DNA of 64,000 nucleotides, taken from Gracilinanus agilis (lineage: Eukaryota). The position numbers and the translations under genes were made by a program. Position 1 is the stretch's first letter, and each line of letters starts with the position of its first letter. Below are positions 4,250 through 49,290 of the stretch, piece after piece. Location of the stretch: positions 720,750,944 to 720,814,943 of the forward strand of contig NC_058130.1 of the NCBI RefSeq assembly GCF_016433145.1. Direction: 5' to 3'. The notes under the pieces are model-generated. The model saw nothing but the letters and a program-made list of their open reading frames with translations. It did not search any database and was not told the origin of the DNA.

Positions 4250-4570
4250 ACGTACTGGTCATTAGAAAAGAAGATAGGTTTGGTCACTGTTTCTGTCCTT
4301 TTTTAAAGAAGGTCAAGTTAGACAGCAGCTCTGCATCCTAGAAGATTTAAGGCATGTAGCTTCTGTCATGAGGGTAATGTCCCTAGAAGATTAAGTAGAC
4401 TCATTCCTGGTGTGTGGCAAATGATTTGAGGACCTAGGGGCCAGGATGGGAACAAAAGAAAGATTTTACAATTCTTGAGGCCTTCTACACTGAATCCTCA
4501 CAGCTCCTCATTAGAAAAATCATGCAATTGTCATTCCATTCCCTTGCCAGTTCAAATCCCTGTAGGGAAG
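4250..4570 (-). promoter_or_regulatory. Predicted OR promoter, non-coding exon 1 and splice donor (copy 1; for the OR at 1..265)
   Basis: CTAATGAGGAGCTGTGAGGAT at 4514..4494; donor-like CA|GTACGT at 4255..4250; homologous to 16690..17012 and 48972..49290. Function is inferred. Confidence 0.6.
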
Positions 4571-5695
4571 GAAATACTAAAAGGAAAGTTCCTAATAATG
4601 AGACCTATATGACAATGGAATTCAACCAATGGAAATCTTTCAGCTGAGGCTTGACAGCTATTTCTTTGGGCTGCTAGAGAAAAGGTTCATTCTATGCCTA
4701 GGGGATGAACTAAATGACCTCAGAGTTGTTCTGGCTCCCTGAAGCCAGTGAGCTCCATCATTACTGAAGGCATCCAAGAAGAAGATGGATGATCACTTTT
4801 GTGCTGTGAAGAGAATTCTTAACAAATGACAAGGTTGGGCTAGATAGTTTCATAGGTGCTTCTTGCTTCTAAAAACCAATGAGTTACCTAATAAAGTAGT
4901 GATTTCCTAATCATTACATTCTATAAGTAAAGGCTTAATGAACACTTATAGTTTTGAAAGTCATGGATTGGAGCCAAATATCTATATTTAAATCCCATTT
5001 ATGTTGCTTAACTTCTCTAAACCTGAGTTTCAAAATCTATAAAGCTAAAATCTTGAACTAGGAGACCTCTAATCTCATTTGTAAGTTTAAATCAATCTGA
5101 TGATCTTGTAAATCTAATCAGGAGATACCTACTCAAGTCTGATTTGGATTATGTGTCCTATGGATTCTCTGTCATTTCAGAGAATATATGAAAGAAAAAA
5201 TTTCAATTAATTCTCTATCTTTGGGGACACCAGCTTCAAGGTGGTATGTTTCCTTCAAGTCCTGCATACCCCTAACTTGGTGGAGAGTCTTCAGTGTTGG
5301 CTTCTTAGGTTGGAGAATTTGATTATATGTCCTCTCACAGAAGACATATTTTTAAAATCTTAATTCTTTTATTATTTTTTAAATCTCAATTATCTCTGTA
5401 GAATGAAAGAGCTAAAAGACAAGTAAAGACCAATTGTTGCCCAATCAGAACCTGGTTTCAGAATTCATACATGCCTCTAAAACTCTGAAGAGGTATGTTC
5501 AGGGTAGATGCTGCCCCCACCCACATTATGAAAGGATACAGATGCCAAAGAAATGGAGAAATAGGCTCACTACATATGAAAGTTTGTGAACCTTACCTCA
5601 GAGTTATACAAGTTAACAGTAGGAAGGTCATGTCAAAATATTGCCAGATAATGATTTCATTCAGAAATTTAGAGACTGATATAATGTTAGAGGTA

Positions 5696-5932
5696 GCTGG
5701 TGACCTAGAAGATAGAGTGCTGGACCTGGAGGAAGGAAGACTCATATTCCTGATTTCAAATCTGGCCTCAGACATTTACTAGCTATGTGAAGTCACATCA
5801 TTTAACTCTGTCTCAGTTTCCTCATCTGTAAAATGAGCTAGAGAATGAAATGGCAAACCACTCCAATGTCTTTGCAGGAAAATCCCAAATGAGGTCAGAA
5901 AGTTGGACACACCTGAAAATGACTGAACAACC
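5696..5932 (+). mobile_element. Mar1-type SINE (CORE plus RTE/BovB tail)
   Basis: CORE followed by GAAATGGCAAACCACTCCA...GAAAATCCC...AGTTGGACAC. Confidence 0.85.
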
Positions 5933-6455: not shown

Positions 6456-6640
6456 ATTATTTTTAAACCCTTGTACTTTGGTGTATTGTCTCATAGGTGG
6501 AAGATTGGTAAGGGTGGGCAATGGGGGTCAAGTGACTTGCCCAGGGTCACACAGCTGGGAAGTGGCTGAGGCCGGGTTTGAACCTAGGACCTCCTGTCTC
6601 TAGGCCTGACTCTCACTCCACTGAGCTACCCAGCTGCCCC
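6456..6640 (-). mobile_element. SINE1_Mdo-type SINE, young
   Basis: Minus strand starts GGGGCAGCTGGGTAGCTCAGTGGA and ends AAGGGTTTAAAA; TSD TTTAATATTATT at 6444..6455 and 6641..6652. Confidence 0.92.
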
Positions 6641-8491
6641 TTTAATATTATTTTAAAAATATTTTTTCATGTTTACATAATTCACTTTATTTCCTTCCTT
6701 TCTTCCCTCCCCACTCCCAGATCCGATAAACGTTTCCACTGGATTATACAAATGTTATGACTTATACATATTTCCATATTTTTTATTTTTGCAATAGATC
6801 AATCTTTTAAAACCAAAACCCCCAATCATATATCCATATAAACAAATAATAAGTCATTTGTTTTTCTTCTGTGTTTCTACTCCCACAGTTCTTTCTTTCT
6901 ATATGAATAGCATTCTTTCTCATAAATCCCTTGAGATTGTCTTGTAGTAACAAAGTACATTGCATTGGATTGGTCCACAATATTTCACTTTCTGTGTATG
7001 ATGTTCTCTTGGTTCTGCTCATTTCACTCTGCATCAGTTCCTGGAGGCTCTTTCAATTCATTCAGAAATCCTCCAGTTCATCATTCCTAACAGCACAGTA
7101 GTATTCCATCACCATCATATATCACAATTTGTTCAGTCATTCCCCAGGTGAAGGATACCCCTTCATTTTCCAATTTTTTGCCACCACAAAGAGTGTGGCT
7201 ATGAATATTTTTGTACAAACTTTTTTCACTATTATCTCTTTATGGTACAAACCTAGTAATGGTATTGCTGTATCAAAGGACATGCATTTTTTAAGCCCTT
7301 TGGGCATAGTTCCAAATTGCCTTCCAGAAAGGTTGGATCAATTCACAGCTCCACCAGCAATGTGTTCCTGTCCCAATTTTGCCACATGCCCTCCAACATT
7401 TATTATTTTCCTTTACCATTATATTGACCAATCTGCTAGGTGTGAGATACTACCTCAGAATTGTTTTGATTTGCATTTCTCTAATGAGGAGGGATTTGAA
7501 CACTTTTTCCATGTGATTATTGATAGTTTTGATTTCTTCATCTGAAAACCGCCTATTCACGTCCCTTGAACATTTGTTAATTGGAGAATGGCTTGATTTC
7601 TTGGACATTTGACTTAGTTCCTTATGAATTTGAGAAATTAGACCCTTGTCAGAGGCATTGTTATAAAAAAATTTTTTCCTAGGTGGTTGCTTCCCTTTTA
7701 ATTTTGGTTGCATTGATTTTGTTTGTACAAAACCTTTTTAAGTTAATGTAATCAAAATTATTCATTTTGCATTTTATAATATTCTCTATCTCTTGCTTGG
7801 TCTTAAATTCTTTCCTTTCCCATAAATCTGACAGGTATACTATTCTATGTTCACCTAATTTACTTATAATTTCCCTCTTTACACTTAAGTCATTTGCCCA
7901 TTCTGAATTTATTTTGGTACAGGGTGTAAGATGTTGATCTAAACCTACTCTCTCCCATACTGTTTTCCAATTATCCCAGCAGTTTTTGTCAATTCATGGA
8001 TTCTTGTCACAAAAGCTAGGATCTTTGAATTTATTGAACACTATCTTGCTGAGATCATTTACCCCAATTCTGTTCCATTGATCCACCCTTCTATCTCTTA
8101 GCCAGCATTATATTGTGATGATCACTGCTTAATAGTATAGTTTAAGATCTGGTACTGCTAGGCCTCCATCCTTCATTTTTTTATTAGTTCTCTTGATATT
8201 CTTGATCCTTTGTTCTTCCAAATGAACTTTGTTATAATTTTTTCTAATTCTATAAAAAAGTTTTTTGGTAGTTTAATAGGTATGGCACTGAATAAGCAAA
8301 TTAATATGGATATGATTGCCATTTTTATTATATTAGTTCATCCTACCCATGAACAATTAATTTTTTTCCTATTGTTTAGATCTAGTTTTATTTGTGTGAA
8401 AAGTGTTTTGAAGTTGTGTTCATATAATTCCTGAGTTTGTCTTAGCAGGCAGATTCCCAAATATTTTATATTACCTAGAGTGATTTTAAAT

Positions 8492-8928
8492 TGTGTGGTG
8501 AAAATGAAGGGAGGATGGTAGAATGGATGGGAGAAAGGAGAGAGGAAGGTAGAGGAAGGGAAAAGTAGGTTGTGGTCCCCAGCCCCCTGCAGGGGAAATT
8601 GACTAGAGCCCTCAAATGAATAGTCAGAGAGCAACTTTAGGGTTTCAATAGCTAGGTTTTATTTAGGTTAGGAAAGGGAAGGTCTACATAAAACTAGGAG
8701 GTGGACAGAAAGGGAAAAAGGTGCCAAGAGAGTTCTGTAGAGAGCTAAGCTTTCAGGGTTGAGAGCAGACCCTCCTGGGTAGAGAGAGAGAAAAGGAACC
8801 AAACTTTCCCTTTTATACTTTCCCTGAAACCTCCCCCAAAGGAAGTGGGAGGTGTCAGGGAAAGTTGTAGCAGAGAGAGTCCTGGGAGACAAAGTCTTCC
8901 AGGGCTTACAATAATTTCAAATGACACA
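8492..8928 (-). mobile_element. ERV1-class solo LTR, 437 bp
   Basis: TGTGT...ACACA termini; 4-bp TSD AAAT at 8488..8491 and 8929..8932; minus-strand GTATAAAAG and AAATAAAA; same family as 58310..58721. Confidence 0.9.
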
Positions 8929-9543
8929 AAATGGAATTCCTTTTTTAACTCTTCCTGCTGATTTTTATTGGAAATAAATAGAATTTTAGAAATAAATAGA
9001 AATGTTGATAAAATATGTGAATTTATTTTGTATCCTGTAAATTTGCTAAAATTATTATTTCCACTAGCTTTTTAGTTGATTTTCTTGGGTTCTCAAAGCA
9101 TACTCTCATTTCATCTGCAAAGAGTAAGTTTAGTTTCCTCACTGGCTACTCTAATCCCTTTGATGTCTTTTTCTTCTCTAATTGCTAAAGCTAGCATTTC
9201 TAATACAATATTAAATAGTGGTGATAATGGGCATCCTTGCTTTACTCCTGGTCATATTGCGAAGGCTTCTAAGTTATCCTCATTGCAGATGATACTTGTT
9301 GATGGTTTTAAATGAATACTGTTTATCATTTTGAGGAAAACCCTTTCTGTTCCTATACATTCTAGTGTTTTCAATAGGAATGGATCTTGTATTTTGTCAA
9401 AGACTTTTTCTGAATCTGTTGAGATAATGATGTGGTTTCTGTTAGTTTGATTATTAATATAGTCAATTATGTGGATGGTTTTCCTAATGTTAAACTAGCC
9501 TTACATTCCTGGTACAAATTCCATCTGGTCATAGTGAATAATC

Positions 9544-10575: not shown

Positions 10576-10579
10576 TCCT

Positions 10580-11900: not shown

Positions 11901-11934
11901 AAGAAAAGAAAAAAAAGTAAAGGACAAGATGGAG

Positions 11935-16085: not shown

Positions 16086-16689
16086 AAGTAGAAAAGGAAT
16101 ATAAAGGTTTTTCCTGATCAGATTTATGGGACCATTAGATTGATTTAGATCTTCAGATATGATTAGAGATCTTTTAGTTCATGATTCTAATTTTAAAGAT
16201 GATGACACTCAGGTCTAGAGAAGATAAGCAGCAGAAATGGGATTTAAATGAAGGTACTTGGTTCCAAATCCATTGTTCTTAAATCTGTAACAGTTTATTA
16301 AGTCTTAATTTGAAGAGCTTAATGATTAGGATTCACTACTTCATGAGGTAACTTATTGGTTTTTAGAGCCAAGATGGACCTTAGAGATGATCTATTCCTA
16401 TCCTATCATTTGTTAGGAATTCTCTCCACAACACAATAGAAAAGTGATTATCCATCTTTTGCTTGGACACCTTTAGTAATGAGGGAGCTGACCAATTCCA
16501 AAGAAGTACATAGATTCAGAGGTTGTTAGAGCCAGAACAACTCTGAGGTCACTTAGTTCGTCTCTTAACCATAAAATTCATCTTGTCTCCAGTGATCTAG
16601 AGAAGTAGTTATCAAGCCTCAGCTGAAAGATTTCTATGTTATTTTCCATTGTGATATAGGCTTTATTATTTGTCAGTTTTCTGCCAGGA

Positions 16690-17012
16690 TTTCCTACCCT
16701 ATAGGGACGTGAACTACTCAGGGAATTGATGACAATGATTTTTCTAATGAGGAGCTATGGGGATTCCACTTTGAAAGCCTAAGAATTGTAAAATCTTTCT
16801 TTTTTTCCCATCCTGCCCCCTAGGTCCTCAAATAATTTGTCATAGACCAGGAATGAGTCTACTTAATATTCTATGGACATTATCCTCCATGCCAGAAGCC
16901 ATGTGTCTTAAATCTGCTAGGATGCAGAGCTGCTGTCTAACTTGCCTGTCTTTACAACAATTCAGGGTAGAAATAATCACCAAACTTGTCTCCTCCCTGA
17001 CCACCAGTAAGT
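16690..17012 (+). promoter_or_regulatory. Predicted OR promoter, non-coding exon 1 and splice donor (copy 2; for the OR at 20678)
   Basis: CTAATGAGGAGCTATGGGGAT at 16744..16764; CCCCTAGG near 16817; donor CA|GTAAGT at 17007..17012; predicted intron 17007..20661. Confidence 0.65.
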
Positions 17013-17279
17013 ATGATGAGGGGGAGGAGAGAGAGAAGAAGGGAGAGAAAATATGAGAATGGGACAAGAGCTGATTTTTTCCCAGAAACTCAAGGAGATT
17101 CTACAGTCCTCACCCAACCCAAATCATACCTCCATCCAGGTTGGATTCCAGATCATTCTGAGCCACTGATGAGTCTCTAAATGTCCAAATGTCAACCTCT
17201 AGTTCAGTGAATGGGCAGGTGGGAGTGTAGTAAAATGTAAAGGAAAAGGAGAATAGGGGAAAAGAAAAGGGAAGAAGAT

Positions 17280-17470
17280 TTATATAGTGTCTACTTTGTG
17301 CCAGGCATGGTGCTAAAAGCTTTTTACAAATGTTAACTCATTTGATCTTCTGTTTATGGTAGGTATTATTTTCTCTATTTTATGATTGAGGGAACTGAGG
17401 CAAACAGATTAAATAACTTGCTTAGGGTCATATAGGTAGTAAATATCTAAGGCTGTGACTTGATCGCAAA
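17280..17470 (-). mobile_element. MIR/CORE-SINE (mirror of 3735..3985)
   Basis: CTACTTTGTGCCAGGC...GAGGGAACTGAGGCA...CTTAGGGTCATA. Confidence 0.8.
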
Positions 17471-17819
17471 GGATGTGTGATCATCCAGAGGATGGGAAGA
17501 AGAGATAAATCTCAGACTCCTTCCCATATGTTTATAACTTAACCTGACCCAGTAGCCAAAATTCACTTTCTCTATCACTCTCCTTCCTATTACCCCTATG
17601 CACAACCTTGTCTCTAGGTATAATGTCTTGGCTTCTATAGGTAAGTCCTCAGCAGGTGGGCTATGGGCAGTTATCATTGAGTACCCCCTCCCTATTCCCT
17701 TCTCATTTTGTGAGGGGAAAAAAGTGGATACCATAGCATGAATAGATGGGTTGCAATTACATTCTCTCTTTCCAAATCTACCAATACTCTGACATTTTCT
17801 ATTTCCATTGGGGTATTGC

Positions 17820-18075
17820 CATCCTTCTAGTCTCCCTGGCTTTCAGCCTCCTCATTAACTGTTACTTCCCATTCAATTTAAAATGCTCTCAACAAGTTTC
17901 TAGTGATCTCTTTATTGACAAATGACAAATCTAATTCCGTTTTTCTCAATTCTCATCCTCCCTAACCTCTCTGAACCATTTGACAAGCTCTTCTCCTGGG
18001 TTGCTGGAGACATTCTCTCCTGCTAGATGATTTCCCTTGATTCTTTGATTATTTTCCTACCTTTTATATCACTCT
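17820..18075 (+). mobile_element. L2 RT fragment (mirror of 2190..2470)
   Basis: AAGTTTCTAGTGATCTC...TTCTCAATTCTCATCCT...ACCTCTCTG. Confidence 0.7.
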
Positions 18076-18179
18076 ACAATTATCAATGCAGAAGCAAAAG
18101 CAGACCACACAGAGTTTTTCCTGACTTTAAGTCCACAACTCTTTTAACTACCATTTTGGACAACAAAAAAAAGGTATTT

Positions 18180-18580
18180 ATTCATTTAATTAATTAATTT
18201 GAAATATTTTTCCGTGTTTACATGTTTCATGTTCTTTCCCTTCCCTCTTACCACTCCCTCCCATAGCCAATGAGAAATTCCACTGGGTTTTACATGTGTC
18301 ATTGATGAAGACCTAGTTCCATATTATTAATATTTGCATTAGGGTGATCATTTAGTCTATATCCTCAATCATATCCCCATCGACCCATGTGATCAAGCAG
18401 TTGTTTTTCTTCTGTGTTTCTACTCCCACAGTTCTTTCTCTGGATATGGATAGCATTCTTTCTCATAAGTCCCTAAGAATTGTTCTGGATCATTGCATTG
18501 CTGCTAGTAGAGAAGTCCATTACATTTGAATGTGCCACAGTGTATCCATCTCTGTGTATAAGGTTCTCCAAGTTCTGCTC
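18180..18580 (-). mobile_element. L1 3'-end insertion, right arm only
   Basis: TSD AAAAGGTATTT at 18169..18179 and 18581..18591; empty site in the left arm near 2080..2105. Confidence 0.88.
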
Positions 18581-18929
18581 AAAAGGTATTTTTAAAGCTA
18601 TGTTTTAATGAAAAAGTATTTTAATATCTTTGCTAAGAAAATTCCAGATAGGGTCATGAAGAGTTGGACATGACTGACATGACTAAATTCATCCAGTTAG
18701 ATTTGGTCCACTGACCCTAGCCTATCAAGAACTTTTTATTACTTATCACTTCTATCCAACATGTTAGCCATTCTTACCAATTTTGTGTCTTCTGCAAATT
18801 TCACAGGCATAGTTTCTATGCCGTCTATGCCCCCAAAGCTATACTTGGACAAAGTAGATTGAAGAAGTTCTAGCACTCCAGTTTGAGGTGACTAAGATGA
18901 TAATGGACAAAAAAGAGGTCGCATATATG

Positions 18930-20350
18930 CTCATGTCTTATTTTCCTTTGTTTTTTCTCTGCCAGGGAACTTGGCCCTCTTCACTGGAAAGGTCAGAGTA
19001 AAAATGATCAACAAAAAAGAGTAAGGACTAAAGAGATAATAATAAGTACCTAGTTATCCTTGGTGAATTCAAGAAATTTGGTCCAGATGAACTATATCTT
19101 CCAGTACTGAGATGAGAGATGTATTTTACTATGGAACCGCTGAATGATATATGAAAGAAGATAGCCATAACAATATATAAAAGAGCCAATATTGCCCCAA
19201 TTATTAAAAAATGGAAAAGAATAGTGTCTATAAAGTATAGATCAGTTAGCTTGACTTCAGTGTCAGAAAAAATTCTATAATTCATTATGAAAAAGATAAT
19301 TAGTGAATATCTAGAAAAGAAATGGTTATAATAAAAAACCTTCACCAAAGACGAATCATGCTAGACTAAACCTATGTCCTTTTGTGTCACAGGGTTATTA
19401 CATTGGTAGATCAGGGAAAGGTTATAGATATTGCTTACCTAGATTATAGCCAAATGTTTGATAAAGATAAAATAATTCTTCCAAAAAAGATAGAAAGATA
19501 GAGATTAGAAGATGGTACAATTCAATGAGTTTAGAAGTGCATGGATGTGCTGTCTCAAAGAGATTATTAATGGTTCATTGTTGAGAATGTCTTCGGGAGT
19601 CTGCTTGGGCCCCTCTTATTTAACGTTTTTACCAGTGACAGTGAAACAAAATTGGTAAGGTTGGCTAACATGTTGGATGACAGTGTTAAGATTTTAAAAG
19701 TTCTTGATAGCCTAGGGGCATTGAACCAAATCTAACAGGGTAAAATTCACTTGGGAAAAGTTAAGACCTTAGTCTAACACTTGGGCTAAAAAAATCAACC
19801 TTGCAATTCAGAGATAGATGGAGGTGTGGCTAGATGAACATTTGTATCCCAAAGTTTTGCATATTTTAGGTCAATGTGATTGATTGATTGATTTTCTTTT
19901 AAAACTCTCTCCTTCCTTCTTGGATTCAATACTGTGTATTGGCTCCAAGGCAGAAGAATGGTAAGGGCTAGGCAATGGGGGTTAAGTGAATTGCCCAGGG
20001 TCACATAGATAGGAAGTGTCTGAGGCCATATTTGAACCCAGGACCTCACATCTCTGGGCCTGACTCTCAATCCACTGAGCCACCCAGCTGCCCCCAGTAC
20101 AATGTGATTTAAAAACATGATGTGGCAAGAGTTAAATCATGAGCAAACATTATCTTGGGCTGCATTAAGAGGAGCACAGCATGCAGGAATAAGAAGATAC
20201 CTCCTCTCTAATGGGTCATCTCAGGACATCCTATATGTCCTTGTGTCTCAGATGATGTTAGAGCTATAATTTGTCTGTAATGGATCACACCTAGAATGAG
20301 TCTTCCACTGAGTTCTAGAAGGACATGGATAGGTTGATGGGCATACAAGG
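18930..20350 (+). mobile_element. L3/CR1 LINE remnant (mirror of 740..2165)
   Basis: RT motifs recognisable (YRSVSLTSV, DIAYLDYSQMFDK) and CR1 3' GCATTAAGAGGAGCAC. Confidence 0.82.
19882..20095 (-). mobile_element. SINE1_Mdo-type SINE, right arm only
   Basis: TSD CAATGTGATT at 19872..19881 and 20100..20109; inserted into L3. Confidence 0.9.
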
Positions 20351-20639
20351 TAACAAGGGTAAATGTCCCCTGGTGGAGATATAATATCTATACATAGATA
20401 CATATATGTGAATGTATACATATGTCTATATAATAAAATTAGAGAGCCTGAAAGGATCTCAGGAATCATTTACACTGAATTTTATAGAAAAGGAAAATGA
20501 GTCTTTTAGAAGGGATTATTCAAACTAAGTAAGGAGGGTATGGTAAAACTGTACTTCAAATTCAGCTCTTCTGAGTCCATCTTTTGGGATTTTATATATA
20601 TATGTGTGTGTCAAGGATGTCTTTATTTTCACTTAATAG

Positions 20640-20664
20640 TCTTCTCCCATCTTTTTCCTAGCAG
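20640..20664 (+). other. 3' splice acceptor upstream of the OR coding exon (NAGNAG)
   Basis: Polypyrimidine TCTTCTCCCATCTTTTTCC then TAG CAG (AG at 20660..20661 and 20663..20664), 13-16 nt before the ATG; identical in the mirror gene. Confidence 0.75.
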
Positions 20665-20677
20665 AAAAAGAAGCTAC

Positions 20678-21613
20678 ATGGGACCAGAAAACCAAACAAG
20701 TATCTCTGAATTTCTTCTTCTAGGATTTTCTGAGAAGCCAGAGCAGCAGCTGCCTCTCTTTGGGCTATTCCTCAGCATGTACGTGGTCACAGTGGGTGGG
20801 AACCTTCTCATCATGCTGACCATTGGTTCTGATTCCCACCTTCACACCCCTATGTATTTCTTCCTCTCCAACCTGTCCTTAGTGGATTTCTGTTTGGTGT
20901 CTACCTTGGTCCCCAAAATGCTGGTGAACTTCCTGACACACAGTAAGGCCATCTCCTATGCTGGCTGCCTCACCCAGATGTACTTCTTCATGGTTTTTGC
21001 TTGTTTAGACACCTTACTCCTCACTGTGATGGCCTATGATCGCTTTGTGGCCATTTGTCACCCGTTGAGTTATGTGACCATCATGAGCCCACAATTCTGT
21101 GGCTTGCTGGTTTTACTCTCCTGGACTATCAGTCTTCTAAATTCAGTACTCCATTGCCTTTTGGTGATGAAACTTTTCTGTACAGAACATGAGATTCCTC
21201 TCTTTTACTGTGATCTTACTCAGATTCTTAAACTGTCTTGTACCGACACCCTCATCAATAATATCTTGGTATATTTAACAACTGTACTGCTGGGTGTTCT
21301 TCCCTTCACAGGAATAATTTTCTCTTATACTCAGATATGTTCTTCTATAATGAAGGTCCCATCTGCTGGGGGAAAGTATAAAGCATTTTCTACCTGTGGG
21401 TCTCACCTCTGTGTTGTTTCATTATTCTATGGAACAGTTCTTGGAGTATATCTGAGTTCCTCAGTCACACAGTCTTCTTGGAAGAGCTCAGTCGCCTCAG
21501 TAATGTATGCTGTGGTTACTCCCATGTTGAATCCCTTCATTTATAGTCTGAGGAACAAAGACATCAAAGATGCCCTGAGAAGACTCATTAGCAGAATGGC
21601 TTCCTCTCAGTGA
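20678..21613 (+). CDS. Olfactory receptor, class II, OR7-like, 311 aa, intact ORF
   Basis: Motifs NQT sequon, [48 protein letters not shown]. Start placed at MGPENQT (20678), not at 20540. Confidence 0.96.
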
Positions 21614-39402: not shown

Positions 39403-39463
39403 CAGTCTGCTAGAATCTTGATTTCATATACTGATTCCATATTCCCAGGGTGATGCCCAATCA

Positions 39464-40399
39464 CTAAGAGGATGCTGTTCTGCTAATGATCCTCTTCAGG
39501 GCATCCTTTATATCCTTGTTTCTCAGGCTATAAATGAAGGGGTTCAGCATGGGGGTTACCACAGAATACATCACTGAGGCAATTGAGATACTCCTGGAGG
39601 AATGGGTAGTTGCAGAACTCAGATATACTCCAAGACCTGTCCCATAGAATAATGAAACAACAGAGAGGTGAGACCCACAGGTAGAAAAGGCTTTATATTT
39701 CCCCCCAGGTGATGGTACTTTTAATATTGAGGAGCAGATCTGAGAATAAGAGAAAAGGATCCCTGTGAGGGGCAAAATACCCAGGAGACCAGTTGCAAAA
39801 TATATTACTATCGTATTAATGAGGGTGTCAGAACAAGAAACCTTCATAACTTCACTAAGATCACAGAAAAAGTGGGAAATTTCACGTTCTGTGCAGAAGG
39901 ACAGCCTCATCATCATTAGAATTTGGAAAATGGAGTTTAGAATACTTATGGTCCATGAGATCAGAATCAAGAGACTACAAATCCGTGGACTCATCAGAGT
40001 GACATAGTGTAGAGGGTGACAGATGGCTACAAAGCGGTCATAGGCCATCACAGTAAGGAGTAAATTGTCTGAACAAGCAAAAATCATAAAGAAGTACATC
40101 TGAGCAAAGCATCCAACATATGAAATGGCCTTATTGTGTGTTAGCATGTTCACCAGCATGTTGGGGACCAAGGTAGTAACTAGACAGAGATCTACCAGGG
40201 ACAAATTGGAGAGAAAGAAGTACATTGGAGTGTGGAGGTGGGAGTCTGAACCAATGGCCAGCATGATGAGAACATTCCCAAACACAGTGACCAAGTACAT
40301 GACCAGGAAGAGCCCAAAGAGGGGCATCTGCTGCTCTTCCTTCTCAGAAATTCCCAGTAGGAGAAATCCCGACACATATGTTTGGTTTTCTGGTTCCAT
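39464..40399 (-). CDS. Olfactory receptor, class II, OR7-like, 311 aa, intact ORF
   Basis: All canonical OR motifs present; 287/311 aa identical to 56647..57582. Confidence 0.96.
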
Positions 40400-40412
40400 A
40401 TATCTGATATAT

Positions 40413-40440
40413 CTACAAGGAAAGGAAGTGAGAAGTTAGC
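40413..40440 (-). other. Branch point, polypyrimidine tract and acceptor before the OR coding exon
   Basis: Minus strand GCTAAC TTCTCACTTCCTTTCCTTG TAG, 13 nt before the ATG; conserved in the paralog (57596..57623). Confidence 0.8.
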
Positions 40441-41872
40441 AAAATGGAAATATAGTCATCCCTTATTTTGTAATGGAGAGAACACTAGATTTAGACTTAG
40501 AAGACTCAAGTTTAAAGGCAAGATCTGTGCCTTTTATTTTTTTTAGATGTCAATTCCTCTTTCTGGGTCTCAGTTTCCTTATATTTAAAATGGAGTTGGA
40601 CTATGTGATCTCTAAGTACTTTCAGCTCTTGCATCCTTGGAAACTCTCCTAACCATATTTAGAACCTAAGTAATTTATAATGAAAGTATATAAAAATTTT
40701 AGAAATGGAATTCCTATAAGTTCAAAATATATTATGAATTAAACATTGAAGTAAATAAATATTTATAGATCAAAAATATTTTAAAAATATTTATAAATAA
40801 AAATTACAAAACTTCAAAATGATGGAAGAAACAACAAAATATTTATCCTAATTATGAAGGGGAGATGATCAATAATTCAGTAAAGAGTTACTTACAACCA
40901 AATAGATGTTCTTTCTCACATGAAAATAAAATAAAAGTAATTTAAAAAGAAAACCCTTTTGATTGGGAAATATATTGATTATAGTTGTGGTAGATAATAA
41001 CTGACATCAAAAATTGTTTTTAAAAATCACAGAAGCAATTCTTTCTTAACAAAATATTTGAACAATTTTCAAAATGAATGCAAATATTTTAATTAATATT
41101 ATTTGTCTTGTGATCTGTATTTCCTCTCTCTCACCTAACCTACCTAATTGAGAAAATAATAAAAACAAAACTTCTTTTACAAACACATAGTCAAGCAAAA
41201 CAAATTCTTCAAATTCCTAATAATCATTTGACATCACTCAATTTCACTAATAATCAGAAAGATATAAAATAACATAACTTTGAGGTACTGCCTCAAACTC
41301 CTGAAATATGTAGGAAATAATTAAAATGTAACACTGATATGTTTGAGTAAGAATAGGTAATCACTCATTCCTTGCAAATGCAATTGCAAAGTTCTAAGAT
41401 ATTTTTGGACAATAATCTCACATTATATGATATTGATCCAATAATTACATTTTGGAGAATATGCTCTGAATGTATTGAAATTATTGATTCAATAATTTTT
41501 AGAGCACCAGTAGGCATACATTCATGAATAAAAAACATTGAAACAATCCTATAATAGGATAATAATTAAATAATTTGTGGTAAATTATTGTTAAGAAATC
41601 CTATAAGTCAATTTGCTATAATGCAACAATGGAGAATACAAAGAACTGCATCAAGACCTTTATCAAATAACAAAGTGAAAACAATAGTTAAATGGATGGA
41701 GAACACACTAGTTATGATTATATAAAAAGTAAAGTGAATGTCAATGAATGGAATCTTGATGAGGAATTAAAGGGAGAGATTATAATATTTTATACAATGT
41801 AATTTGTTAATTTAAATGTAAATAGGTACTAAATAAATTTAAATGTATCTATTGACATTCAATTATTCTTTT

Positions 41873-42002
41873 ATAACCCTTACCTTCTGTCTTGGAGTCA
41901 ATAATGTGTATTGGTTCCAAAACAGAAGAGCAGAAAGTGCTAGGCAATGGGGGTTAAAAGACTTGCCAAGGTTCACAGAGCTATGAAGTGTCTGAGGCCA
42001 GA
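41873..42002 (-). mobile_element. 5'-truncated SINE1, shared with 59514..59634
   Basis: TTATAACCCTTACCTTCTG...GCCAGA at the same paralogous site in both copies. Confidence 0.82.
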
Positions 42003-44017
42003 ACAATGATCTTTTAAATAAAATATTTGGTAAATATTTTTAAGAGAATATGTGCAGGTAGAATAAATTCTGCTCAGCTGTAAAGGGATCTCAATTTTTG
42101 GAGGGGCAACAGTAATATGGCAGGAAGAGTGAGGGATGGGAAGTTTGCTTTATAGAAAGAACAGTTCAGAAATGAGAGATATCAAGAGAATAAAAGGAGT
42201 TAATGTGATCCATTGTTTTCCCTCCATAATCTACCCCCATCCCCCCAAAACAAAGGCAGGGGCTGGAGAGTTGTTGAGTCCAAGATCCTTAAGTCAGCAA
42301 TAGCCTTACTTCAGTGTAAGATCAAGGGAGATTAACTAAAGTTAACATGGTCTAAAATGATGCCTACACTCAGGAAACCAAGTATACAAAAGCTCGAGGT
42401 TATACAAAAAAGATACTTTCAAATGCAACATTCAATATATGCACTATACTGGTACTTTCTTTCCTATTTAAAAAAATTATTACTAGAATTTTCAAAAGGT
42501 AGAAAGATTAATTTGCAGAATTGCAGGAATGTAGACTTAAGTTCAATATAAAGAAGAATTTCTTAAAAATCAGATCCATACAGAAATGAAATGGGATGCT
42601 TCAGGAGTCAATGAGTTTCCCAACACAGAAGTTTTTTCCAGCAGAGATAAAATGATCACTTGTTCATGGTACCATCATTAGTTTAGTCATTATATATTTG
42701 AAACCTTAGTATTATCATTCAATATTTTTTCTCTTTTATTTCCTATTTCCAATCAGGTGCCAAGTCCTGTTGAATTCACATCCAATACATATCTGGCATC
42801 TACTACACCTTTCTTCCCATTGTCATGATCTAAGATATAAGAAACTCTCACTATTGCCTGAGGGTACATGGCAGTCTTTTCTTAACAGTCCTCAATATAA
42901 CTGGAAATCCATACTCAACCCCAATCTTGCTTTCACTTGACTCTTTAATACAATGTTTCTCTCCTATTCAAGAACCTTCAATGCTGTCTACTATTTCCTA
43001 CCAAATTCAAGATATATTCCCTTGAATGACATTGAAGGCTTTCCATAATCTGGTGCAACACTAAATTTTCCCTTTCAGTTAATTTGGGGAATTGGGCTAG
43101 GATACCATAAAGATATTGCTAGAAGATATAAAAGATAGTAATTGCCTAAATTGAAGGGTTTCTATCAACAGATCCAACATAAAAAACAGGGCATGTGTAC
43201 TTTTCATTAGTGAACAAAGCATTGGACACACATCAGGAAATTAAGGTGATAAGTTCCAGCTCCCGAAAGCTGAATGAGTAGAGATCCTCCACAGGCCAGG
43301 TACCAAAAATGAATATTTTCTCTCAGGGTTCCTAGAGTTACCACTTTAGAGAAAATTCCTCAACACACCAAGGAACTGCTAGGTAAATGACAACCAGTAA
43401 AAAGTAAGGTTTCCCTTTGGGGTTCTAGACATAATGTTGGTCTTCAAAGCTGCCCTAATAGGTTCTTCTATCATCTCACTGAAATGGCAACAATTTTAAT
43501 GAAAGAACAGTTTGTTAATTTGAAATTTATCATATACTTGGTGTAAATTTAGTACCATGGTCAGAGAATCAACTTCCCTTATATAAGACCATAGCAGCTC
43601 AAAAAGCAGTTCCAATGGTATTCCCTCAGCTACTAGGCTATTTCACCATCATAAACCTCTTCTCTGAATACAATTCTTTCACACTTTTAGTTTGAATGGA
43701 GTTTTGAACCTCCTATTCTTGGGACAAGACCCTGCTACCAACCTAGGTGTGTTTTCCTGCAAAACTAGAAACCCCTTACAGGAAACCTGGCAAAATTGGT
43801 TAACAGACCTCTAGATGAAAATAGAGAATGTGTGATATCATGAAGTAGACCATCTTGGGAGAAGTATAGAAATTTTTAATTTATATTTAAGCAAATTCTG
43901 ATATTTTATATCATCTTTTACTTGTTTTCTTATTCTTTGAAGTCAGACAAGTCTTATTCCTCTTTTGAGTGATTCTCTTCAGATACTTATATTTAATATC
44001 TTGATAAGTTCCTCAAG

Positions 44018-45340
44018 CACCTTGTTACTGAGCCTTGCTGTCAAACTCTCTAGCTACCCAACACCCTGTGCTACCACACCTACCGACCGACCCTCCCCCC
44101 CCCCCAGCCTTTTCCCTCAACTGCCTTCCTCAGGCCATTTCCACCAAGGCAAAGGGATTATCCTATTGTATGTCCACTATCCAGAACCTCCACTCTTTGG
44201 ACCTCTATGCTGTTGCAAGTGAGCTTGACAACCTGCTTCCTGCTAGGACTAAGGATTATATCTATATAATAATTCAACAGAAAAACAGGAGGAAGATGCT
44301 CACTACTGTCCAAGGGATTGCTGATTATTGTCATAAAAAGAAACTAGAGAAGTCATTGATGGAGAAATTTGCCTGCAATGATTCTGTAATTGAGTATTGA
44401 GAATATGGAGAAGTAATTCAACTACAGGGTGACCAGCACAAGAACATATGCCAGTTTCTCCTGGAGACTGGGTTGGCTAAGGACCACCAGCTGAAGGTTC
44501 ATGGGTTTTAAGTGCTCGTGGCTCACTGAAGCTTGTGAGAATTTCCTTGCAATGTGTAGAAAACTTCCCTTCTGTCCCTTGTCACAAGTTTAAAAGCCTC
44601 ACAGCTTGTTTAATGTAACTATTTGGAATCCACTATTTAACTTGGACTAATGTGACTCATTCATGTAATAAACCAAAAAGAGCAATGCCACCTAGCCTTT
44701 CAGTCCCTCATTTAAACAAAAGTAAAGCCTATCAGTGCTCAGTTGGAAACTAAAATAATCTGTTGTTTCAGTCAAGTCCAAAGTCCTAGCAGCATCTGAT
44801 ACCCTATCTTTTCAGAGACTCCTTGATGCTCTCTCCACAGAGCCCCCTGTCCATTTAAGAAAACTATGACTCTCTGAGCTACCCTTAATGATGCTCAGAA
44901 GAATAAGGTCACCAACACCCAGTTGAACCACCAAGATAAAGATAGCCTTTGTTAGCAGAACGGGCATCCCCAGGATGATTTGCACCAACTGACTCAGGGA
45001 ATAGTTTCATTTTAGGGCAATGGCATGACGTTTTCTTTCTTACATCACACCAAGGTCCAGTGCTTGACTAAACTTTTACTAGTAGTGTTCTGCTTCTGGG
45101 GAATGCACAAGTGGAGAGAAACCCATACCACAAGGCCAACTTTACCTAAATTAAACTTTTGACATTGAACTAATGTATTGAAACAGTCAGTGTAGTAACT
45201 GCAGAGCTTGCTTCTTAATAGCAACAACTGCCCAATGCCATGTGAAGTCAACAGACTGATTTTTTAAAAATTAAATAGTTTAAATGTGATATAATATATT
45301 TAAGCTCTTATTTAAATAAAACTGACCTGTGAAGAAAAAA
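44018..45340 (+). pseudogene. EIF1: EIF1 (SUI1) processed pseudogene with 5' UTR, 113-codon CDS (44170..44511, premature TGA at 44398..44400) and long 3' UTR
   Basis: MSTIQNLHSLD...LTTVQGIA...KFACN..VIE.*EYGEVIQLQGDQHKNICQFLLETGLAKDHQLKVHGF; intronless; AATAAA at 45315..45320 and A-tail; TSD ATAAGTT(C/T)CTCAAG at 44004..44017 and 45341..45354. NLHS and GLAKD favour EIF1 over EIF1B. Confidence 0.95.
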
Positions 45341-48300
45341 ATAAGTTTCTCAAGGGCAAAGATTATGACTTAGCTTACTACTTGGATTCCTTTAATTGGC
45401 ACATGGCTTCCCTATCCATATTTCTAGAATCTTTTGAAACGAATATTTTTGGGGTATGGCAAAGAAAAAGGTGCCATATGTGGTTGTAACCAATAACTCA
45501 CATATACATTTTCCTTAAATACAGACACATATTTTATTAAAAGACAGAAATGCTACCTTGTCCTGTTTATATATGAGAGATGATTAAGAATTTTTGATAT
45601 TATATTATACATATTTTAATTTTTATTATTCATCTACTGCTTAACTAAATTTTCATCCTTTCAAGGTCTCATCACTACAAATAAATAATCTTAGGTTCTC
45701 AAAAGTCAGAAAAATAGAGACTAATCTCTGTCACTTCCTATGCAGTAGAAAAAAACTTAAAAGAAGTTATTCATCAGAGGCTGGTCTGTGGTTGATGCAT
45801 TTTTTAGGGACCAGAATCTTATGAAACCATCTTCTAGGGCATAGATGGTTTAATATCTGCATCATTAGGAGAAAGTATTAATCATATCTGGGATCTGAAG
45901 AGTAAAAGTCACATTCTTATAGAGGTTGAAAGTTCATTAAGCATTTTTGCCACAACACTCAAGATGGGAATTTGAAGGGCAAGTATTTTGACTCATTTTT
46001 TAGGTATGAAAAAAATTAGACTGAGAATTTAAATGACTTGCTTAGAACTAGACTTAGAAAGCTGGCAAACCAAGTTCTTAGAAAATTCTCAATTTTATTC
46101 ATGTATCTTGAAGACATTGATTTTGTAAAATATTACTCTGTGTTATAACTAGCAAGTGCCTTCACCTCTTAGGCTTTTTTTGTCTGAAAAAATAAAGGGG
46201 TTAGGAATGATATAAAGAAGATTTTCTCTCATCTTGAGAAAAAGGAAGAGTAGGAGGAGGGATGAGCAGTACAGGAGATGATTGCCAGAGATGTAAAATG
46301 AAAGTGAACATATCATAAAAAAATAAAGGAGTGAGATAGATCCAAAGGGTGCAGTGATAACACCCTGTTTGGCTTCAGTCTAGATACTCTCCTGCATACC
46401 AAAGACCTTAGTGTTCCCAGAACTGAATACAGAACTTTAGATATGGACTGAACACGGAACTGATTTTAGAGTTAAAAGTCTCTAATATCTAGTATTTTCT
46501 CTCTGTAACATTATTGATAAGTAATTTCTCCTCTTCTAGCTTCAGTTTCTCCATTAGTTTCCATTAGGTGATTTCTATGACTCGTTACCTCTGACATTCT
46601 TTGTTCCTAGGCTCCAGTTTTAGGAGTTAAGTCAGGGACTAGTAGTGATCCAAAGAACTATGAGCTGTCAGCTCTATTTTGAGGAACAGCACTGAATTCT
46701 CCCATTGTGGAAAGGTGCAGCAACCTGCAATGGAAGAATTGAGGAGGAGGCAACCTTCTTTATGGTGGCAATAGAGTGGCTACTGTTGTGGAACCTTATG
46801 ACAGCTTCAGCTGCCTTCAGAGGTTGTCTCTGACCTCAGTAAACTTCTGCCATTTGGTATAGGTTTGGCTACTTTGGGAGTATCATTAGGAAACTGCTGA
46901 CTTTTGGGTTTCCTTCAGTACTGAAGTGCTGGGAAGGTGGGAAGGCAGTCAGGAGTTCTTTATGTCTTTCATTCTATGGATTCTCCTAAGCTATTGCTTC
47001 ACTTGGATTGTAATGTCTTGTAGTGTTAGGTTTCTACTCTGATGTGACTATTTGATAAATGAGGATTTTTCAGACAGCCAAGGTCTGCATTTTTTATGAG
47101 ACATCAGTGTGATGAATGCCATTCACCTAGAGAGGGTTTTTGGGAGCTTCAGACTCTGCTTCCAAAGCTGATGTTTTATAATCTTTGACCCCTTTCTGAG
47201 CCTTAACTTAGATTTTCTTTCTAGATCTCAATTTTTAGTTTTCATGGAATCAGGGACATTGATGTTAGCCTTGTAGCTGGATAAACTTTCTAGACAGGAT
47301 TATAAGATGAGAGGGTTTTATTTATTTTAATAATATATTATTTAGATTTAGAAAGTATCTTAAAGGTCATCTCGTACTATATACAGCTGAAGAAACTGAT
47401 GCCAGAAGTAACATGTCCAAAGAGATATAGGTGACTGTGCCTGGCAGAAAGTGTTTAATAAATGCTGCTTCTTTGATGAGAGGCAAAGGCAGGAAACTGC
47501 CAAAATCCTCTAAAGAATCAGCATCCTCTTAAGAACCCAGAAAGAGATTGTTTTGTGGCTGAACTCTGAACTATCTTCTACAATGGAGAGCAGAGTAACC
47601 ATCAGAGTCATTCCAGCTCTTATGAGGAGTCTACCTGGATGTTTCACCTAATGTGGTCAGCTTGATGTTTGCATATGGAAATCATTTGCTAGAGTTTGGC
47701 AAGTGGATTTAGTAAAAGCACAGGTCATCCAAAAAAAAAAAAAAGGAAAAAAATCTACTTTTGGAAGGGATTTAAAATACATATAAATTACCAAGGATTG
47801 GAATATTCTTAGAATACACAATGACAGAATCTATACATCCTTAAAGCGTAGAATGTCTGACCTACAAATTTTACAAGTTTGAAACTGAGATCTGGAAAGA
47901 AGGGAAATGACTTTTCCAAAGTCACAGAATGAGTTGATGATAAAGCTAGGACTAAAACTCAGGTCTTCTGATTCTGTTTGTTGCAACACAATGAAATAAT
48001 GAAATATAACAGTAACACTCGTAACAAAAATGATTTTGACTTCTCTTGTCCAGGGCCCCAGAGAATTCCTGCTCACTACTATCATTTGTAGTCCAATTGA
48101 ATTTTCCAATCCTTCTCCAGCCCTTGTATAATAGCCAATTCCTGAGTCATTCTCACTACTTTCTCCTTGACAGTATACTTAGGAATTCCAATCCTCCCTC
48201 AATTTCTTATTTTCTTGTCTTCGCTTTGCTTATAACAAGGAATTAGATTTAGCCTCCTCATCAACTTTTATAAGGGATAGAATTCTTCTTTAACTTATTT

Positions 48301-48971
48301 CATTTCTGGCCCTTTGGATAGTGAAGTTCTCTGGATATTGCAAAGTTAAGTTTGTTGGACGTCTCTCAGCCTTAGAGTCAGAATGCTTGTTAGGTAAGCC
48401 CTCCCATGATCCAGATTTCTGTCTTCTGTTTTTGCCAAGTACCACAATGGGAAATTCTTTACGTGCTGCTAGTCAAAGATTCTTCTTGATAAATTTACTT
48501 AAGATCACTTGTCTACATCTGGTCTCTCCTATTATAATGATATCAGCTACTCTTTTTAGTAATTTAAAGTTACCAAATACCTCTGCAACCACATATTTTA
48601 ATTCCAAAAGATCTGTGAAATACATAGAGCAGGCCTATTTTGTTTCATGCTGTCATTATAGAGATGGTAATTGAATTGCTCAAGATCTCACAGATAGTCC
48701 TCTGTAGCAGGCTTGGGACTTGAACTGAGTTTTCTTGTTTGAATTTAGGACTTTCCCCACTGCACTCCCCTATGCTCCCTACTGGAGGTCATAGTGAACT
48801 CTGGACTTTCCTTTAGACTTAATGCTGCATCAGACTGGTACTTCTAGACTCAACAATATTAGACTAAGATTTAAATTTTATTGGCTTGTAATGATTTTCT
48901 TGGATTTCTGAGGAAGAAAGGCATACCTCTTGCCTTTGCCTCTTTCACATTGACTCCCCTTCCCTCATAGT

Positions 48972-49290
48972 ACTTACAGTGCATCACCAAGAAGCAATGC
49001 TTGACTGATATTACTTCTGTCCTAGATTGTTGTCAGGAAGGAAGACACCAGCTCTTCCTTGGAGAACAGGTAGAGAAAAGGCGTTGGGGACAGGGAGTGA
49101 GGTATCAGAGAGGCACGAGTAGACTCCTTCTTGTCCTGGAACTGATGGTTTCCCTAGGGGCAATGACAAGTAGGGGAATATTTTTGATTTCTAGAATAAT
49201 AGAGACTCATCCCCATGGCTCCTCATTAGGCAAATCATACAATTGTCTTTCCATTCCTGGAGCATTTCCGCTCCCTGTGGGAACACAAGG
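48972..49290 (-). promoter_or_regulatory. Predicted OR promoter, non-coding exon 1 and splice donor (copy 3; for the OR at 40399)
   Basis: CTAATGAGGAGCCATGGGGAT at 49229..49209; O/E-like TCCCTAGGGG at 49151..49160; donor CT|GTAAGT at 48977..48972. Confidence 0.6.

What the first reader, a model, noticed from the sequence alone, without database searches (positions are those of the whole stretch)
4250..49290. One conserved promoter / non-coding exon / splice-donor module upstream of three OR genes
A roughly 320-bp non-repeat module occurs at 4250..4570 (-), 16690..17012 (+) and 48972..49290 (-), each co-oriented with and upstream of an OR CDS (about 4.0, 3.7 and 8.6 kb away). Shared blocks in order: CCC(T)A(C/T)AGGGA; GACAAT; CTAATGAGGAGCYRTGRGGAT (4494..4514, 16744..16764, 49209..49229); GCCCCTAGG; GAGTCTACT; GAGCTG(C/G)TGTCT; then a donor GTA(A/C)GT (4255..4250, 17007..17012, 48977..48972). 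Copies 1 and 3 also share a MIR3/L3 remnant just upstream. The third copy serves a much more diverged receptor whose intron shows no homology I could see, so the module appears selectively retained. Established knowledge: OR promoters carry homeodomain (Lhx2/Emx2, TAATKR) and O/E (Ebf) sites and splice to a single coding exon. This predicts introns 282..4255, 17007..20661 and 40413..48977.
Basis: partly seen in the sequence, partly recalled or inferred. Interest (0 to 1): 0.75.

Follow-up and report, generated by a model that had tools for sequence, protein, structure and literature searches.

The report
Shared olfactory-receptor promoter and first-exon module
Three smell-receptor genes in this opossum window carry the same roughly 370-bp stretch a few kb upstream, most likely their inherited promoter plus non-coding first exon; this is ordinary gene architecture for the family, and no RNA data could be found to prove it.

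Summary
The module occurs exactly three times in the window: 4250-4621 (-), 16641-17012 (+) and 48972-49342 (-). Each copy is co-oriented with an intact olfactory receptor (OR) coding exon 4.0, 3.7 or 8.6 kb downstream.

Copies 1 and 2 belong to a whole-gene inverted duplication that stays alignable through the intron, so their likeness alone says little. Copy 3 is a true island of homology. A 125-bp core is 71% identical to copies 1/2, against 48-59% for other alignable non-coding DNA. A weaker exon-like stretch follows, and homology ends near a conserved GTAAGT donor.

The core holds one invariant homeodomain site (TAATGA). The O/E (Olf/Ebf factor) sites are only degenerate.

The best reading is a shared ancestral proximal promoter, non-coding exon 1 and splice donor of one OR subfamily. 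This is a known architecture, and this scan has already reported similar modules elsewhere in this genome.

It is not proven:
- No RNA run holds the locus.
- A related species' DNA is no more conserved in the module than in the intron.
- "Non-repeat" is doubtful: the 5' part reads, antisense, like the C-terminal end of a CR1/L3 LINE ORF2. I could not confirm that objectively.

The parts
4250..4621 (-). Module copy 1, upstream of OR unit 1 (ATG at 265, CDS runs off the window start).
   Evidence: It is 81% identical to copy 2 and is embedded in whole-unit homology 5130-1.
16641..17012 (+). Module copy 2, upstream of OR unit 2 (CDS 20678-21613).
48972..49342 (-). Module copy 3, upstream of OR unit 3 (CDS 40399-39464). 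It is an isolated island of homology to copies 1/2.
   Evidence: nhmmer E about 4e-31 against units 1 and 2.
16641..16764 (+). Conserved core, the putative proximal promoter. Its counterparts are 4621-4494 (-) and 49342-49209 (-).
   Evidence: 71% identity between copy 3 and copies 1/2 with few gaps. Significant on its own, E 7e-9 to 9e-14.
16745..16750 (+). Invariant homeodomain-type site TAATGA inside the block CTAATGAGGAG. Its counterparts are 4513-4508 (-) and 49228-49223 (-).
   Evidence: The block matches 10 of 11 positions of the V$HOXF consensus mTAATgrggrw, which is enriched in mouse OR promoters (PMC3247239). In copies 1/2 it matches 10/13 positions of the 'extended homeodomain' AACTTTTTAATGA (PMC7804114).
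16696..16707 (+). O/E-like palindrome ACCCTATAGGGA. Its counterparts are 4568-4557 TCCCTACAGGGA and 49283-49272 TTCCCACAGGGA.
   Evidence: Two mismatches to TCCCYNGRGAR on both strands in each copy. Spacing is non-canonical, so this is weak evidence.
49150..49160 (-). Near-consensus O/E site CCCCTAGGGAA, present in copy 3 only. The block GCCCCTAGG is shared by all three copies (16816-16824, 4441-4433).
   Evidence: One mismatch; the window background for hits with one mismatch or fewer is 0.31 per kb.
17007..17012 (+). Putative splice donor GTAAGT. Its counterparts are 4255-4250 GTACGT (-) and 48977-48972 GTAAGT (-).
   Evidence: Same alignment column in all three copies. It is the only decent donor conserved in all three. 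Beyond it, homology between copy 3 and copies 1/2 is not detectable on its own.
20640..20677 (+). Acceptor region of unit 2: a polypyrimidine tract, then the tandem acceptor TAGCAG (introns would end at 20661 or 20664), then 13 nt of 5' UTR before the ATG.
   Evidence: The second AG (20664) is the one conserved in units 3/4.
266..300 (-). Acceptor region of unit 1. The same TAGCAG occurs at 284-279, and the ATG is at 265.
40400..40440 (-). Acceptor region of unit 3: CTAAC branch-like site, polypyrimidine tract and TAG at 40415-40413, then 13 nt of 5' UTR. The unit 4 counterpart is 57583-57623.
20678..21613 (+). OR coding exon of unit 2 (311 aa).
   Evidence: Pfam 7tm_4, E 1e-53.
39464..40399 (-). 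OR coding exon of unit 3 (311 aa).
   Evidence: Pfam 7tm_4, E 3e-56.
56647..57582 (-). OR coding exon of unit 4 (311 aa), a tandem duplicate of unit 3. Its module is predicted near 66.3-66.6 kb, outside the window.
   Evidence: Unit 3/4 homology runs to 46134 <-> 63470. No module copy lies in 57.6-64 kb.
1..265 (-). Partial OR coding exon of unit 1 (first 88 codons).
49255..49425 (+). Probable relic of a CR1/L3-type LINE ORF2 C-terminus, antisense to the OR gene and overlapping the 5' part of module copy 3. Counterparts are about 4540-4700 (+) and about 16530-16720 (-).
   Evidence: Translations read ...GAFPLPVGTQGALAANFLIMRTAQQWN, KGKFLIMRPI*QWN followed by MEIFQLRLDSYF, and IEIFQLRLDNYF. The likeness to the CR1 motif comes from my memory and was not confirmed by phmmer, Pfam or the Atlas.

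Best explanation
The module is the proximal promoter, non-coding first exon and splice donor of one class-II olfactory receptor subfamily. It was inherited from the ancestral gene unit and copied along with the gene at each duplication.

Inferred working:
- Homeodomain factors (Lhx2/Emx2 type) bind the invariant TAATGA. O/E (Ebf) factors bind the degenerate O/E-like sites in the ~125-bp core (16641-16764 and its counterparts).
- Transcription starts some tens of bp downstream, probably near the GC-richer CCCCTAGG block that follows an A/T-rich TATA-like patch.
- An exon of roughly 150-200 nt ends at GTAAGT (17006|17007, 4256|4255, 48978|48977).
- The exon is spliced over 3.7-8.6 kb to the acceptor 13-16 nt before the ATG.

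Shown: the three copies, their extent and their conservation profile; the conserved donor and acceptor consensus; the homeodomain site.
Inferred: the transcription start site, factor binding, and use of the junctions.

The 5' part of the module probably began as an old CR1/L3 LINE fragment lying antisense to the gene.
For: - There are exactly three copies in 64 kb, each co-oriented with an intact 7tm_4 coding exon and 3.7-8.6 kb upstream of it.
- Between gene pairs whose 4-fold sites are only 60-64% identical, non-coding homology survives at just two places: this island (E about 4e-31) and the ~270 bp before the acceptor.
- The core is 71% identical, against 48-59% in the other alignable non-coding blocks. 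One 21-bp block is 20/21 identical between copies 2 and 3.
- GTAAGT/GTACGT sits at one alignment column at the 3' edge of detectable homology.
- The acceptor, polypyrimidine tract and branch-like site are conserved in all four genes.
- Between copies 1 and 2, the highest non-coding identity of the whole unit (91%) is at 16784-16884, against a background of about 75%.
- TAATGA is invariant.
- GC dips and then rises around the CCCCTAGG block, and window GC is 36%. Both fit published OR promoter features (PMC3247239; PMC12547500).
- OR transcription start sites usually lie under 10 kb upstream, with 1-2 short UTR exons (PMC1955453).
- Read depth over the module in a related species' DNA is single-copy-like (2-12), while true repeats in the same stretch reach 10^3-10^6.
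Against: - There is no RNA evidence. No RNA run holds the locus.
- In those related-species contigs the module differs by 6-8.5%, the same as the intron (6-9%). The CDS differs by 2-6%. The differences include TAATGA to TAATAA at 16749 and a change in the CCC of the O/E-like palindrome at 16698. Orthology of those contigs is not established.
- Copies 1/2 have no O/E site within one mismatch of the consensus core. The TATA-like patches are poor matches.
- The putative exon between copy 3 and copies 1/2 is no better conserved than other alignable non-coding DNA (53-54%).
- Part of the module looks like an old LINE fragment, so some likeness could come from repeat origin.
Confidence: 0.62

Rival explanations
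1. Neutral hitch-hiker. The island is an old LINE fragment and neighbouring DNA that sat upstream of the ancestral gene and was copied with it. It remains alignable by chance and because few insertions hit it. The real promoter lies elsewhere.
For: - The exon-like part is only 53-54% identical between copy 3 and copies 1/2, like other alignable non-coding blocks.
- Related-species divergence in the module equals that of the intron, and it touches the TAATGA and CCC blocks.
- Antisense translation shows CR1-like C-terminal motifs.
- There is no transcript evidence.
Against: - The core is 71% identical, against 48-59% elsewhere, and a 21-bp block is 20/21 identical.
- A consensus donor is kept at the same column in all three copies.
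- Detectable homology ends near the donor.
- The highest non-coding identity between copies 1 and 2 falls inside the module.
- The rest of 3.7-8.6 kb of intron has lost detectable homology.
Confidence: 0.2
2. Regulatory element but not the start site. The conserved core is a gene-proximal enhancer or choice element bound by homeodomain/O/E factors, and the GTAAGT is incidental.
For: - The best-conserved part is the factor-site-like core, not the putative exon.
- A homeodomain site lies immediately next to a G-rich, O/E-like half site (CTAATGAGGAGCCATGGGGAT), which recalls adjacent HD/O-E arrangements in OR enhancers (PMC5608512; PMC7804114).
Against: - One copy travels with each gene, in a fixed orientation.
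- Published OR enhancers are intergenic elements shared by clusters, and the composite motif is reported as enriched in enhancers relative to promoters (PMC12547500).
- The conserved donor and the exon-like stretch (E 2e-7) are left unexplained.
Confidence: 0.1
3. Independent insertions. Units (1,2) and units (3,4) each acquired their own 5'-truncated copy of one LINE family. The three-way likeness would then reflect repeat family membership, not shared descent or function.
For: - LINE copies are 5'-truncated, so they tend to share the same 3' region.
- CR1-like motifs appear antisense in all three copies.
- Another such relic lies at 42554-42592 in the unit-3 intron.
Against: - That independent relic matches the modules only at E 0.14-0.72 and is not found by the three-copy HMM. 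The modules match each other at E 7e-9 to 9e-14 for the core alone.
- All three copies have the same orientation and the same donor column.
- phmmer against 1.84 billion proteins found no LINE protein at all, so even the repeat assignment is unproven.
Confidence: 0.05

Closest known systems
Mouse OR proximal promoters with non-coding 5' exons (M71/Olfr151, MOR23, P3; genome-wide maps by Clowney 2011, Young 2011, Plessy 2012, as summarised in PMC12547500 and PMC3247239)
   Same: - An AT-rich region without a CpG island, a few kb upstream of a single coding exon.
- A homeodomain site and O/E-like sites within about 200 bp of the inferred start.
- A short non-coding exon spliced to an acceptor just before the ATG.
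- A TAATGA core with a T-rich 5' flank, as in the 'extended homeodomain' site.
   Different: - The start site and factor binding are not mapped here.
- O/E sites are degenerate in two of the three copies.
- The species is a marsupial.
Subfamily-wide conserved promoter / first-exon blocks of mouse V1R genes (PMC1955453)
   Same: - Paralogues of one subfamily share a conserved block that covers the promoter and the upstream exon.
[quoted passage not shown]
- Promoter conservation is only slightly above the surrounding non-coding block in most subfamilies, and gene conversion is a possible contributor.
   Different: - A different receptor family and a different organ.
- Here only three copies could be compared, with no RACE data.
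Conserved promoter of the OR37/MOR262 (family 13) genes, and other OR promoter cassettes already reported by this scan in this genome (notes s1-170993, s1-181971, s1-153945)
   Same: The same kind of finding: a short non-coding module repeated upstream of each member of an OR subfamily.
   Different: The sequence is different. The AGGGA-W-N-ATG-Y-CCC plus TATAAA cassette of s1-181971 is not present here. I did not re-test those notes.
OR cluster enhancers (H, P, J elements, 'Greek Islands')
   Same: Homeodomain and O/E-type sites close together.
   Different: - Those are single intergenic elements serving many genes.
- This module is duplicated with each gene and ends in a splice donor.
CR1/L3 LINE 3' fragments
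   Same: Antisense translation of the 5' part gives ...NFLIMRTAQQWN... and ...EIFQLRLD..., in the order and spacing I recall for the CR1 ORF2 C-terminus.
   Different: There is no significant database match, the module is at single-copy depth, and it is tied to OR genes. The assignment rests on memory.

Membership tests
OR proximal promoter + non-coding first exon | Lies within about 10 kb upstream of a single OR coding exon and is co-oriented with it. | tested here: met
   3.7, 4.0 and 8.6 kb upstream, on the same strand as the 7tm_4 exons.
OR proximal promoter + non-coding first exon | Transcripts start there in olfactory epithelium (RACE/CAGE/RNA-seq). | not testable with these tools
   No RNA run holds the locus.
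OR proximal promoter + non-coding first exon | The exon ends in a functional donor that is joined to an acceptor upstream of the ATG. | tested here: inconclusive
   Consensus GTAAGT/GTACGT is conserved at one column, and polypyrimidine-AG acceptors are conserved 13 nt before each ATG. Use of the junction was not observed.
OR proximal promoter + non-coding first exon | A homeodomain (Lhx2/Emx2-type) site near the start site. | tested here: met
   TAATGA is invariant in the three copies at one column. Binding was not tested.
OR proximal promoter + non-coding first exon | An O/E (Ebf) site within a few hundred bp upstream of the start site. | tested here: inconclusive
   Only copy 3 has sites within one mismatch of TCCCYNGRGAR. 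The shared palindrome has two mismatches, and the background rate for two mismatches is 3.8 per kb.
OR proximal promoter + non-coding first exon | AT-rich with no CpG island, and a local GC rise at the start site. | tested here: met
   Window GC is 36%. There is a dip at -40 and a rise at 0 to +80 around the CCCCTAGG block in all three copies. The signal is weak.
OR proximal promoter + non-coding first exon | Higher conservation than neighbouring non-coding DNA. | tested here: inconclusive
   Met between paralogues for the core: 71% against 48-59%, and 91% against about 75% for copies 1/2. Not met in the related-species contigs: 6-8.5% divergence in the module against 6-9% in the intron.
Greek-Island-type OR enhancer | A single intergenic element shared by many genes, with a composite Lhx2/Ebf motif. 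| tested here: not met
   One copy per gene, each duplicated with its gene. The composite motif itself was not tested.
Dispersed repeat (CR1/L3 LINE fragment) | Many copies unrelated to OR genes, and a significant match to the repeat consensus or its protein. | tested here: inconclusive
   There are only three copies in the window and single-copy depth at 90% likeness or more. phmmer, Pfam and the Atlas gave no LINE match. CR1-like peptide motifs are seen by eye. No repeat library was at hand.

The most novel reading that the evidence does not exclude
A 5'-truncated CR1/L3 LINE fragment that landed antisense upstream of an ancestral marsupial OR gene was taken over wholesale as that gene's promoter, first exon and splice donor. 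On this reading the homeodomain site is the antisense of two ORF2 codons, and the fragment has been kept through all later duplications of the subfamily.
Probability: 0.25. Interest if true: 0.4.

Novelty: new member of a known kind. Interest (0 to 1): 0.25.

Why it matters
If confirmed, the finding gives three, probably four, opossum OR genes their missing 5' ends. Automatic annotation usually omits these. It also offers a marsupial example of how far an OR promoter drifts between paralogues while keeping a ~125-bp core with one homeodomain site. It does not change the picture of OR regulation. The only less ordinary aspect is the possible origin of the promoter and first exon from an old LINE fragment.

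Tried and rejected
- RNA test: the look-up of sequencing runs found no RNA holder. The four best 'RNA?' runs proved to be low-coverage DNA-like contigs of a related species. They cover intron, module and CDS alike, and no listed joint matches the predicted junction.
I therefore could not fetch the sequence beyond 64000 for the fourth gene, or orthologous loci in other species.
- Rfam: no family anywhere in the window.
- LINE origin:
  - A 23-nt pattern recalled from memory had no match at up to 3 mismatches.
  - phmmer of the stop-free antisense ORF 48971-49384 against 1.84 billion proteins gave one hit, P0001. It is an 830-aa tandem-repeat product matched in 13 weak stretches and is not a LINE protein.
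  - Pfam at E up to 10 and the ESM Atlas gave nothing usable.
  - Weak HMM hits at 8866-8957, 37209-37273 and 7643-7694 were not convincing on alignment.
- A metagenome scan for the 30-nt core pattern gave no hit.
- The search of earlier findings by sequence was blank.
- Coding-exon reading rejected: the alignment gaps are not multiples of three, and copies 1/2 have stops in every antisense frame.
- I did not run the search for homologous proteins, because the proteins are plainly ORs and the operators flagged that search as costly.

Full report
**What is there**

The window holds four class-II olfactory receptor (OR) coding exons (Pfam 7tm_4):
- unit 1: ATG at 265, minus strand, runs off the window start;
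- unit 2: 20678-21613 (+);
- unit 3: 40399-39464 (-);
- unit 4: 57582-56647 (-).

Every block and donor coordinate checks out against the sequence (alignment A1). Only these three copies occur on either strand of the 64 kb, and three methods agree: blastn with word size 7, nhmmer with each piece of the module, and a three-copy HMM run with --max.

**How the copies relate**

- Units 1 and 2 are a head-to-head inverted duplication that stays alignable over the whole gene unit, 16105-20942 against 5130-1. Across that alignment, 100-bp windows are mostly 66-80% identical. The module windows reach 82%, 91% and 83%, and the coding exon reaches 99%. The likeness of copies 1 and 2 is therefore largely inherited. 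The modest excess at 16784-16884 is the highest non-coding value in the unit.
- Units 3 and 4 are tandem duplicates, alignable from the CDS up to 46134 <-> 63470. This places unit 4's expected module near 66.3-66.6 kb, outside the window. No copy lies between 57.6 and 64 kb.
- Between the two pairs, the CDS is 79% identical and 4-fold sites are 60-64% identical. Non-coding homology survives at only two places:
  - the last ~270 bp before the ATG, a MIR-like block plus the acceptor (E 1.5e-10);
  - the module (E about 4e-31).

**Anatomy of the island**

I split the island into pieces and searched each alone.

| Piece | Coordinates | Result against copy 3 |
|---|---|---|
| Core | 16641-16764 | E 7e-9 to 9e-14 |
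| Middle | 16782-16979 | E 2e-7 to 5e-5 |
| After the donor | ~230 bp | no hit |

Identity of copy 3 to copies 1/2:

| Region | Identity |
|---|---|
| Core | 71%, few gaps |
| Middle | 53-54% |
| After the donor | 48-50% |
| MIR-like block | 52-59% |
| Last 60 bp before the ATG | 61-63% |

So "selective retention" is real for a ~125-bp core. It also holds for a few short blocks: GCCCCTAGG, GAGTCTACT, AGAGCTGSTGTCT and the donor. The body of the putative exon is not distinguishable from other alignable non-coding DNA.

**Signals**

- TAATGA is invariant at one column, at 4513, 16745 and 49228. The block CTAATGAGGAG fits 10 of 11 positions of the V$HOXF consensus, which is listed among matrices enriched in mouse OR promoters (PMC3247239). 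[quoted passage not shown]
- O/E evidence is weak. Against the V$NOLF core TCCCYNGRGAR, only copy 3 has sites with one mismatch (49160 and 49056). The shared palindrome TCCCTAYAGGGA has two mismatches, a level that occurs 3.8 times per kb by chance.
- An A/T-rich, poorly TATA-like patch precedes the CCCCTAGG block. GC dips and then rises there in all three copies. This fits published OR promoter features but is not strong.
- The donor is cca|GTAAGT, cca|GTACGT and act|GTAAGT at one column. It is the only decent donor conserved in all three copies.
- Acceptors are conserved in all four genes. Each has a polypyrimidine tract, a branch-like TTAAT/CTAAC, and an AG 13 nt before the ATG. Units 1/2 have a tandem TAGCAG acceptor, so the intron may end at 20661 or 20664. 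The second AG is the one shared with units 3/4.

**Expression test**

This was the decisive test, and it failed for lack of data.
- No RNA run holds the stretch.
- The four runs laid on 16500-21700 carry short contigs over module, intron and CDS alike, so they are DNA of a related species.
- None of the joints listed matches the predicted junction; 294 further joints were not shown.

Two by-products are useful:
- Depth over the module is 2-12, while real repeats in the same stretch reach 10^3 to 10^6. The module is therefore not a young dispersed repeat.
- The contigs differ from the window by 6-8.5% in the module, 6-9% in the intron and 2-6% in the CDS. The differences fall at 16749 (TAATGA to TAATAA) and at 16698, in the CCC of the palindrome. 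If those contigs are orthologous, recent constraint on copy 2's module is not detectable.

No orthologous locus, and no sequence beyond 64000, could be fetched.

**Repeat origin**

Translating the strand opposite to the OR gene gives:
- copy 3: a stop-free 138-codon frame (48971-49384) ending ...PGAFPLPVGTQGALAANFLIMRTAQQWN;
- copy 1: KGKFLIMRPI*QWN, followed by MEIFQLRLDSYF;
- copy 2: IEIFQLRLDNYF.

From memory, this is the order and spacing of the C-terminal motifs of CR1/L3 LINE ORF2 (...RKNFFTxRVVxxWNxLP...SLEVFKxRLD). By eye the likeness may run on through the homeodomain block and the exon.

I could not confirm this objectively:
- phmmer against 1.84 billion proteins returned only a tandem-repeat artefact;
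- Pfam and the Atlas were blank;
- no repeat library was available.

So "non-repeat module" is doubtful for at least the 5' ~100 bp, and the whole module may be a LINE relic.

This does not rescue the refuting scenario. An independent relic of the same type at 42554-42592 matches the modules only at E 0.14-0.72. The modules match each other at E 7e-9 to 9e-14 for the core alone. They share descent, and probably constraint, beyond family membership.

**Verdict**

The architecture is well known:
- OR genes have short non-coding upstream exons and promoters with homeodomain and O/E sites (PMC12547500, PMC3247239).
- Paralogue-wide promoter/first-exon blocks with a donor motif are documented for V1R genes (PMC1955453).
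- This scan has already reported similar OR promoter modules on other DNA of this same genome (notes s1-181971, s1-170993, s1-153945). Those notes are leads I did not re-test.

I class the finding as a new member of a known kind, of low to moderate interest.

Noticed in passing
window 1-265 (-) vs 20678-20942 (+): The first 264 nt of the unit 1 and unit 2 coding exons are 98.9% identical, with 100% identical protein. Their introns are only 66-80% identical. This fits gene conversion between the inverted paralogues, as another first-reader note (s1-189314) proposes.
   Followed up: partly
window 330-520 (-), 20440-20620 (+), 40470-40671 (-), 57650-57823 (-): A MIR-like SINE core (CATTTTACAGATGAGGAAACTGA...) sits at the same place just upstream of the acceptor in all four OR genes. 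Its insertion therefore predates all the duplications. The MIR identity is from memory.
   Followed up: partly
window 20659-20664 (+) and 284-279 (-): A tandem NAGNAG acceptor (TAGCAG) lies in units 1 and 2. Units 3/4 have TTGTAG at the same place. Either AG could be used, with no effect on the protein.
   Followed up: no
window 48971-49384 (+): A stop-free 138-codon frame runs antisense across the whole of module copy 3. Copies 1 and 2 have stops in the matching frame. It is probably a chance-preserved relic frame of a LINE ORF2 and not a gene.
   Followed up: partly
window 42400-42700 (+): A separate CR1/L3-like ORF2 C-terminal relic (…CRLKFNIKKNFLKIRSIQK*NGMLQESMSFPTQKFF…) lies inside the unit 3 intron, also antisense to the OR gene.
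   Followed up: partly
window 18240-18587 and 19806-20153: Two very high-copy interspersed repeats sit in the unit 2 intron. Summed contig depth is 0.5-4.6 million in the four runs of the related species. The second family recurs at least eight more times in the window, for example at 39221-39406, 56403-56589, 51570-51739 and 6481-6640.
   Followed up: no
P0001 (protein): An 830-aa predicted protein is made of 13 tandem 63-aa units (…SLGQAQRTSSLPGPSKQPGTLSGASSENILITRTLQTTRHSLWG…). The units weakly resemble the antisense frame of the module. It may be the translation of a satellite derived from a related repeat; its source organism is unknown.
   Followed up: no
window 20540-20677 (+): The open frame of unit 2 extends 46 codons upstream of the conserved ATG, through the acceptor and the MIR-like block. 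This extension is not conserved in units 3/4 and would mislead ORF-based annotation.
   Followed up: no
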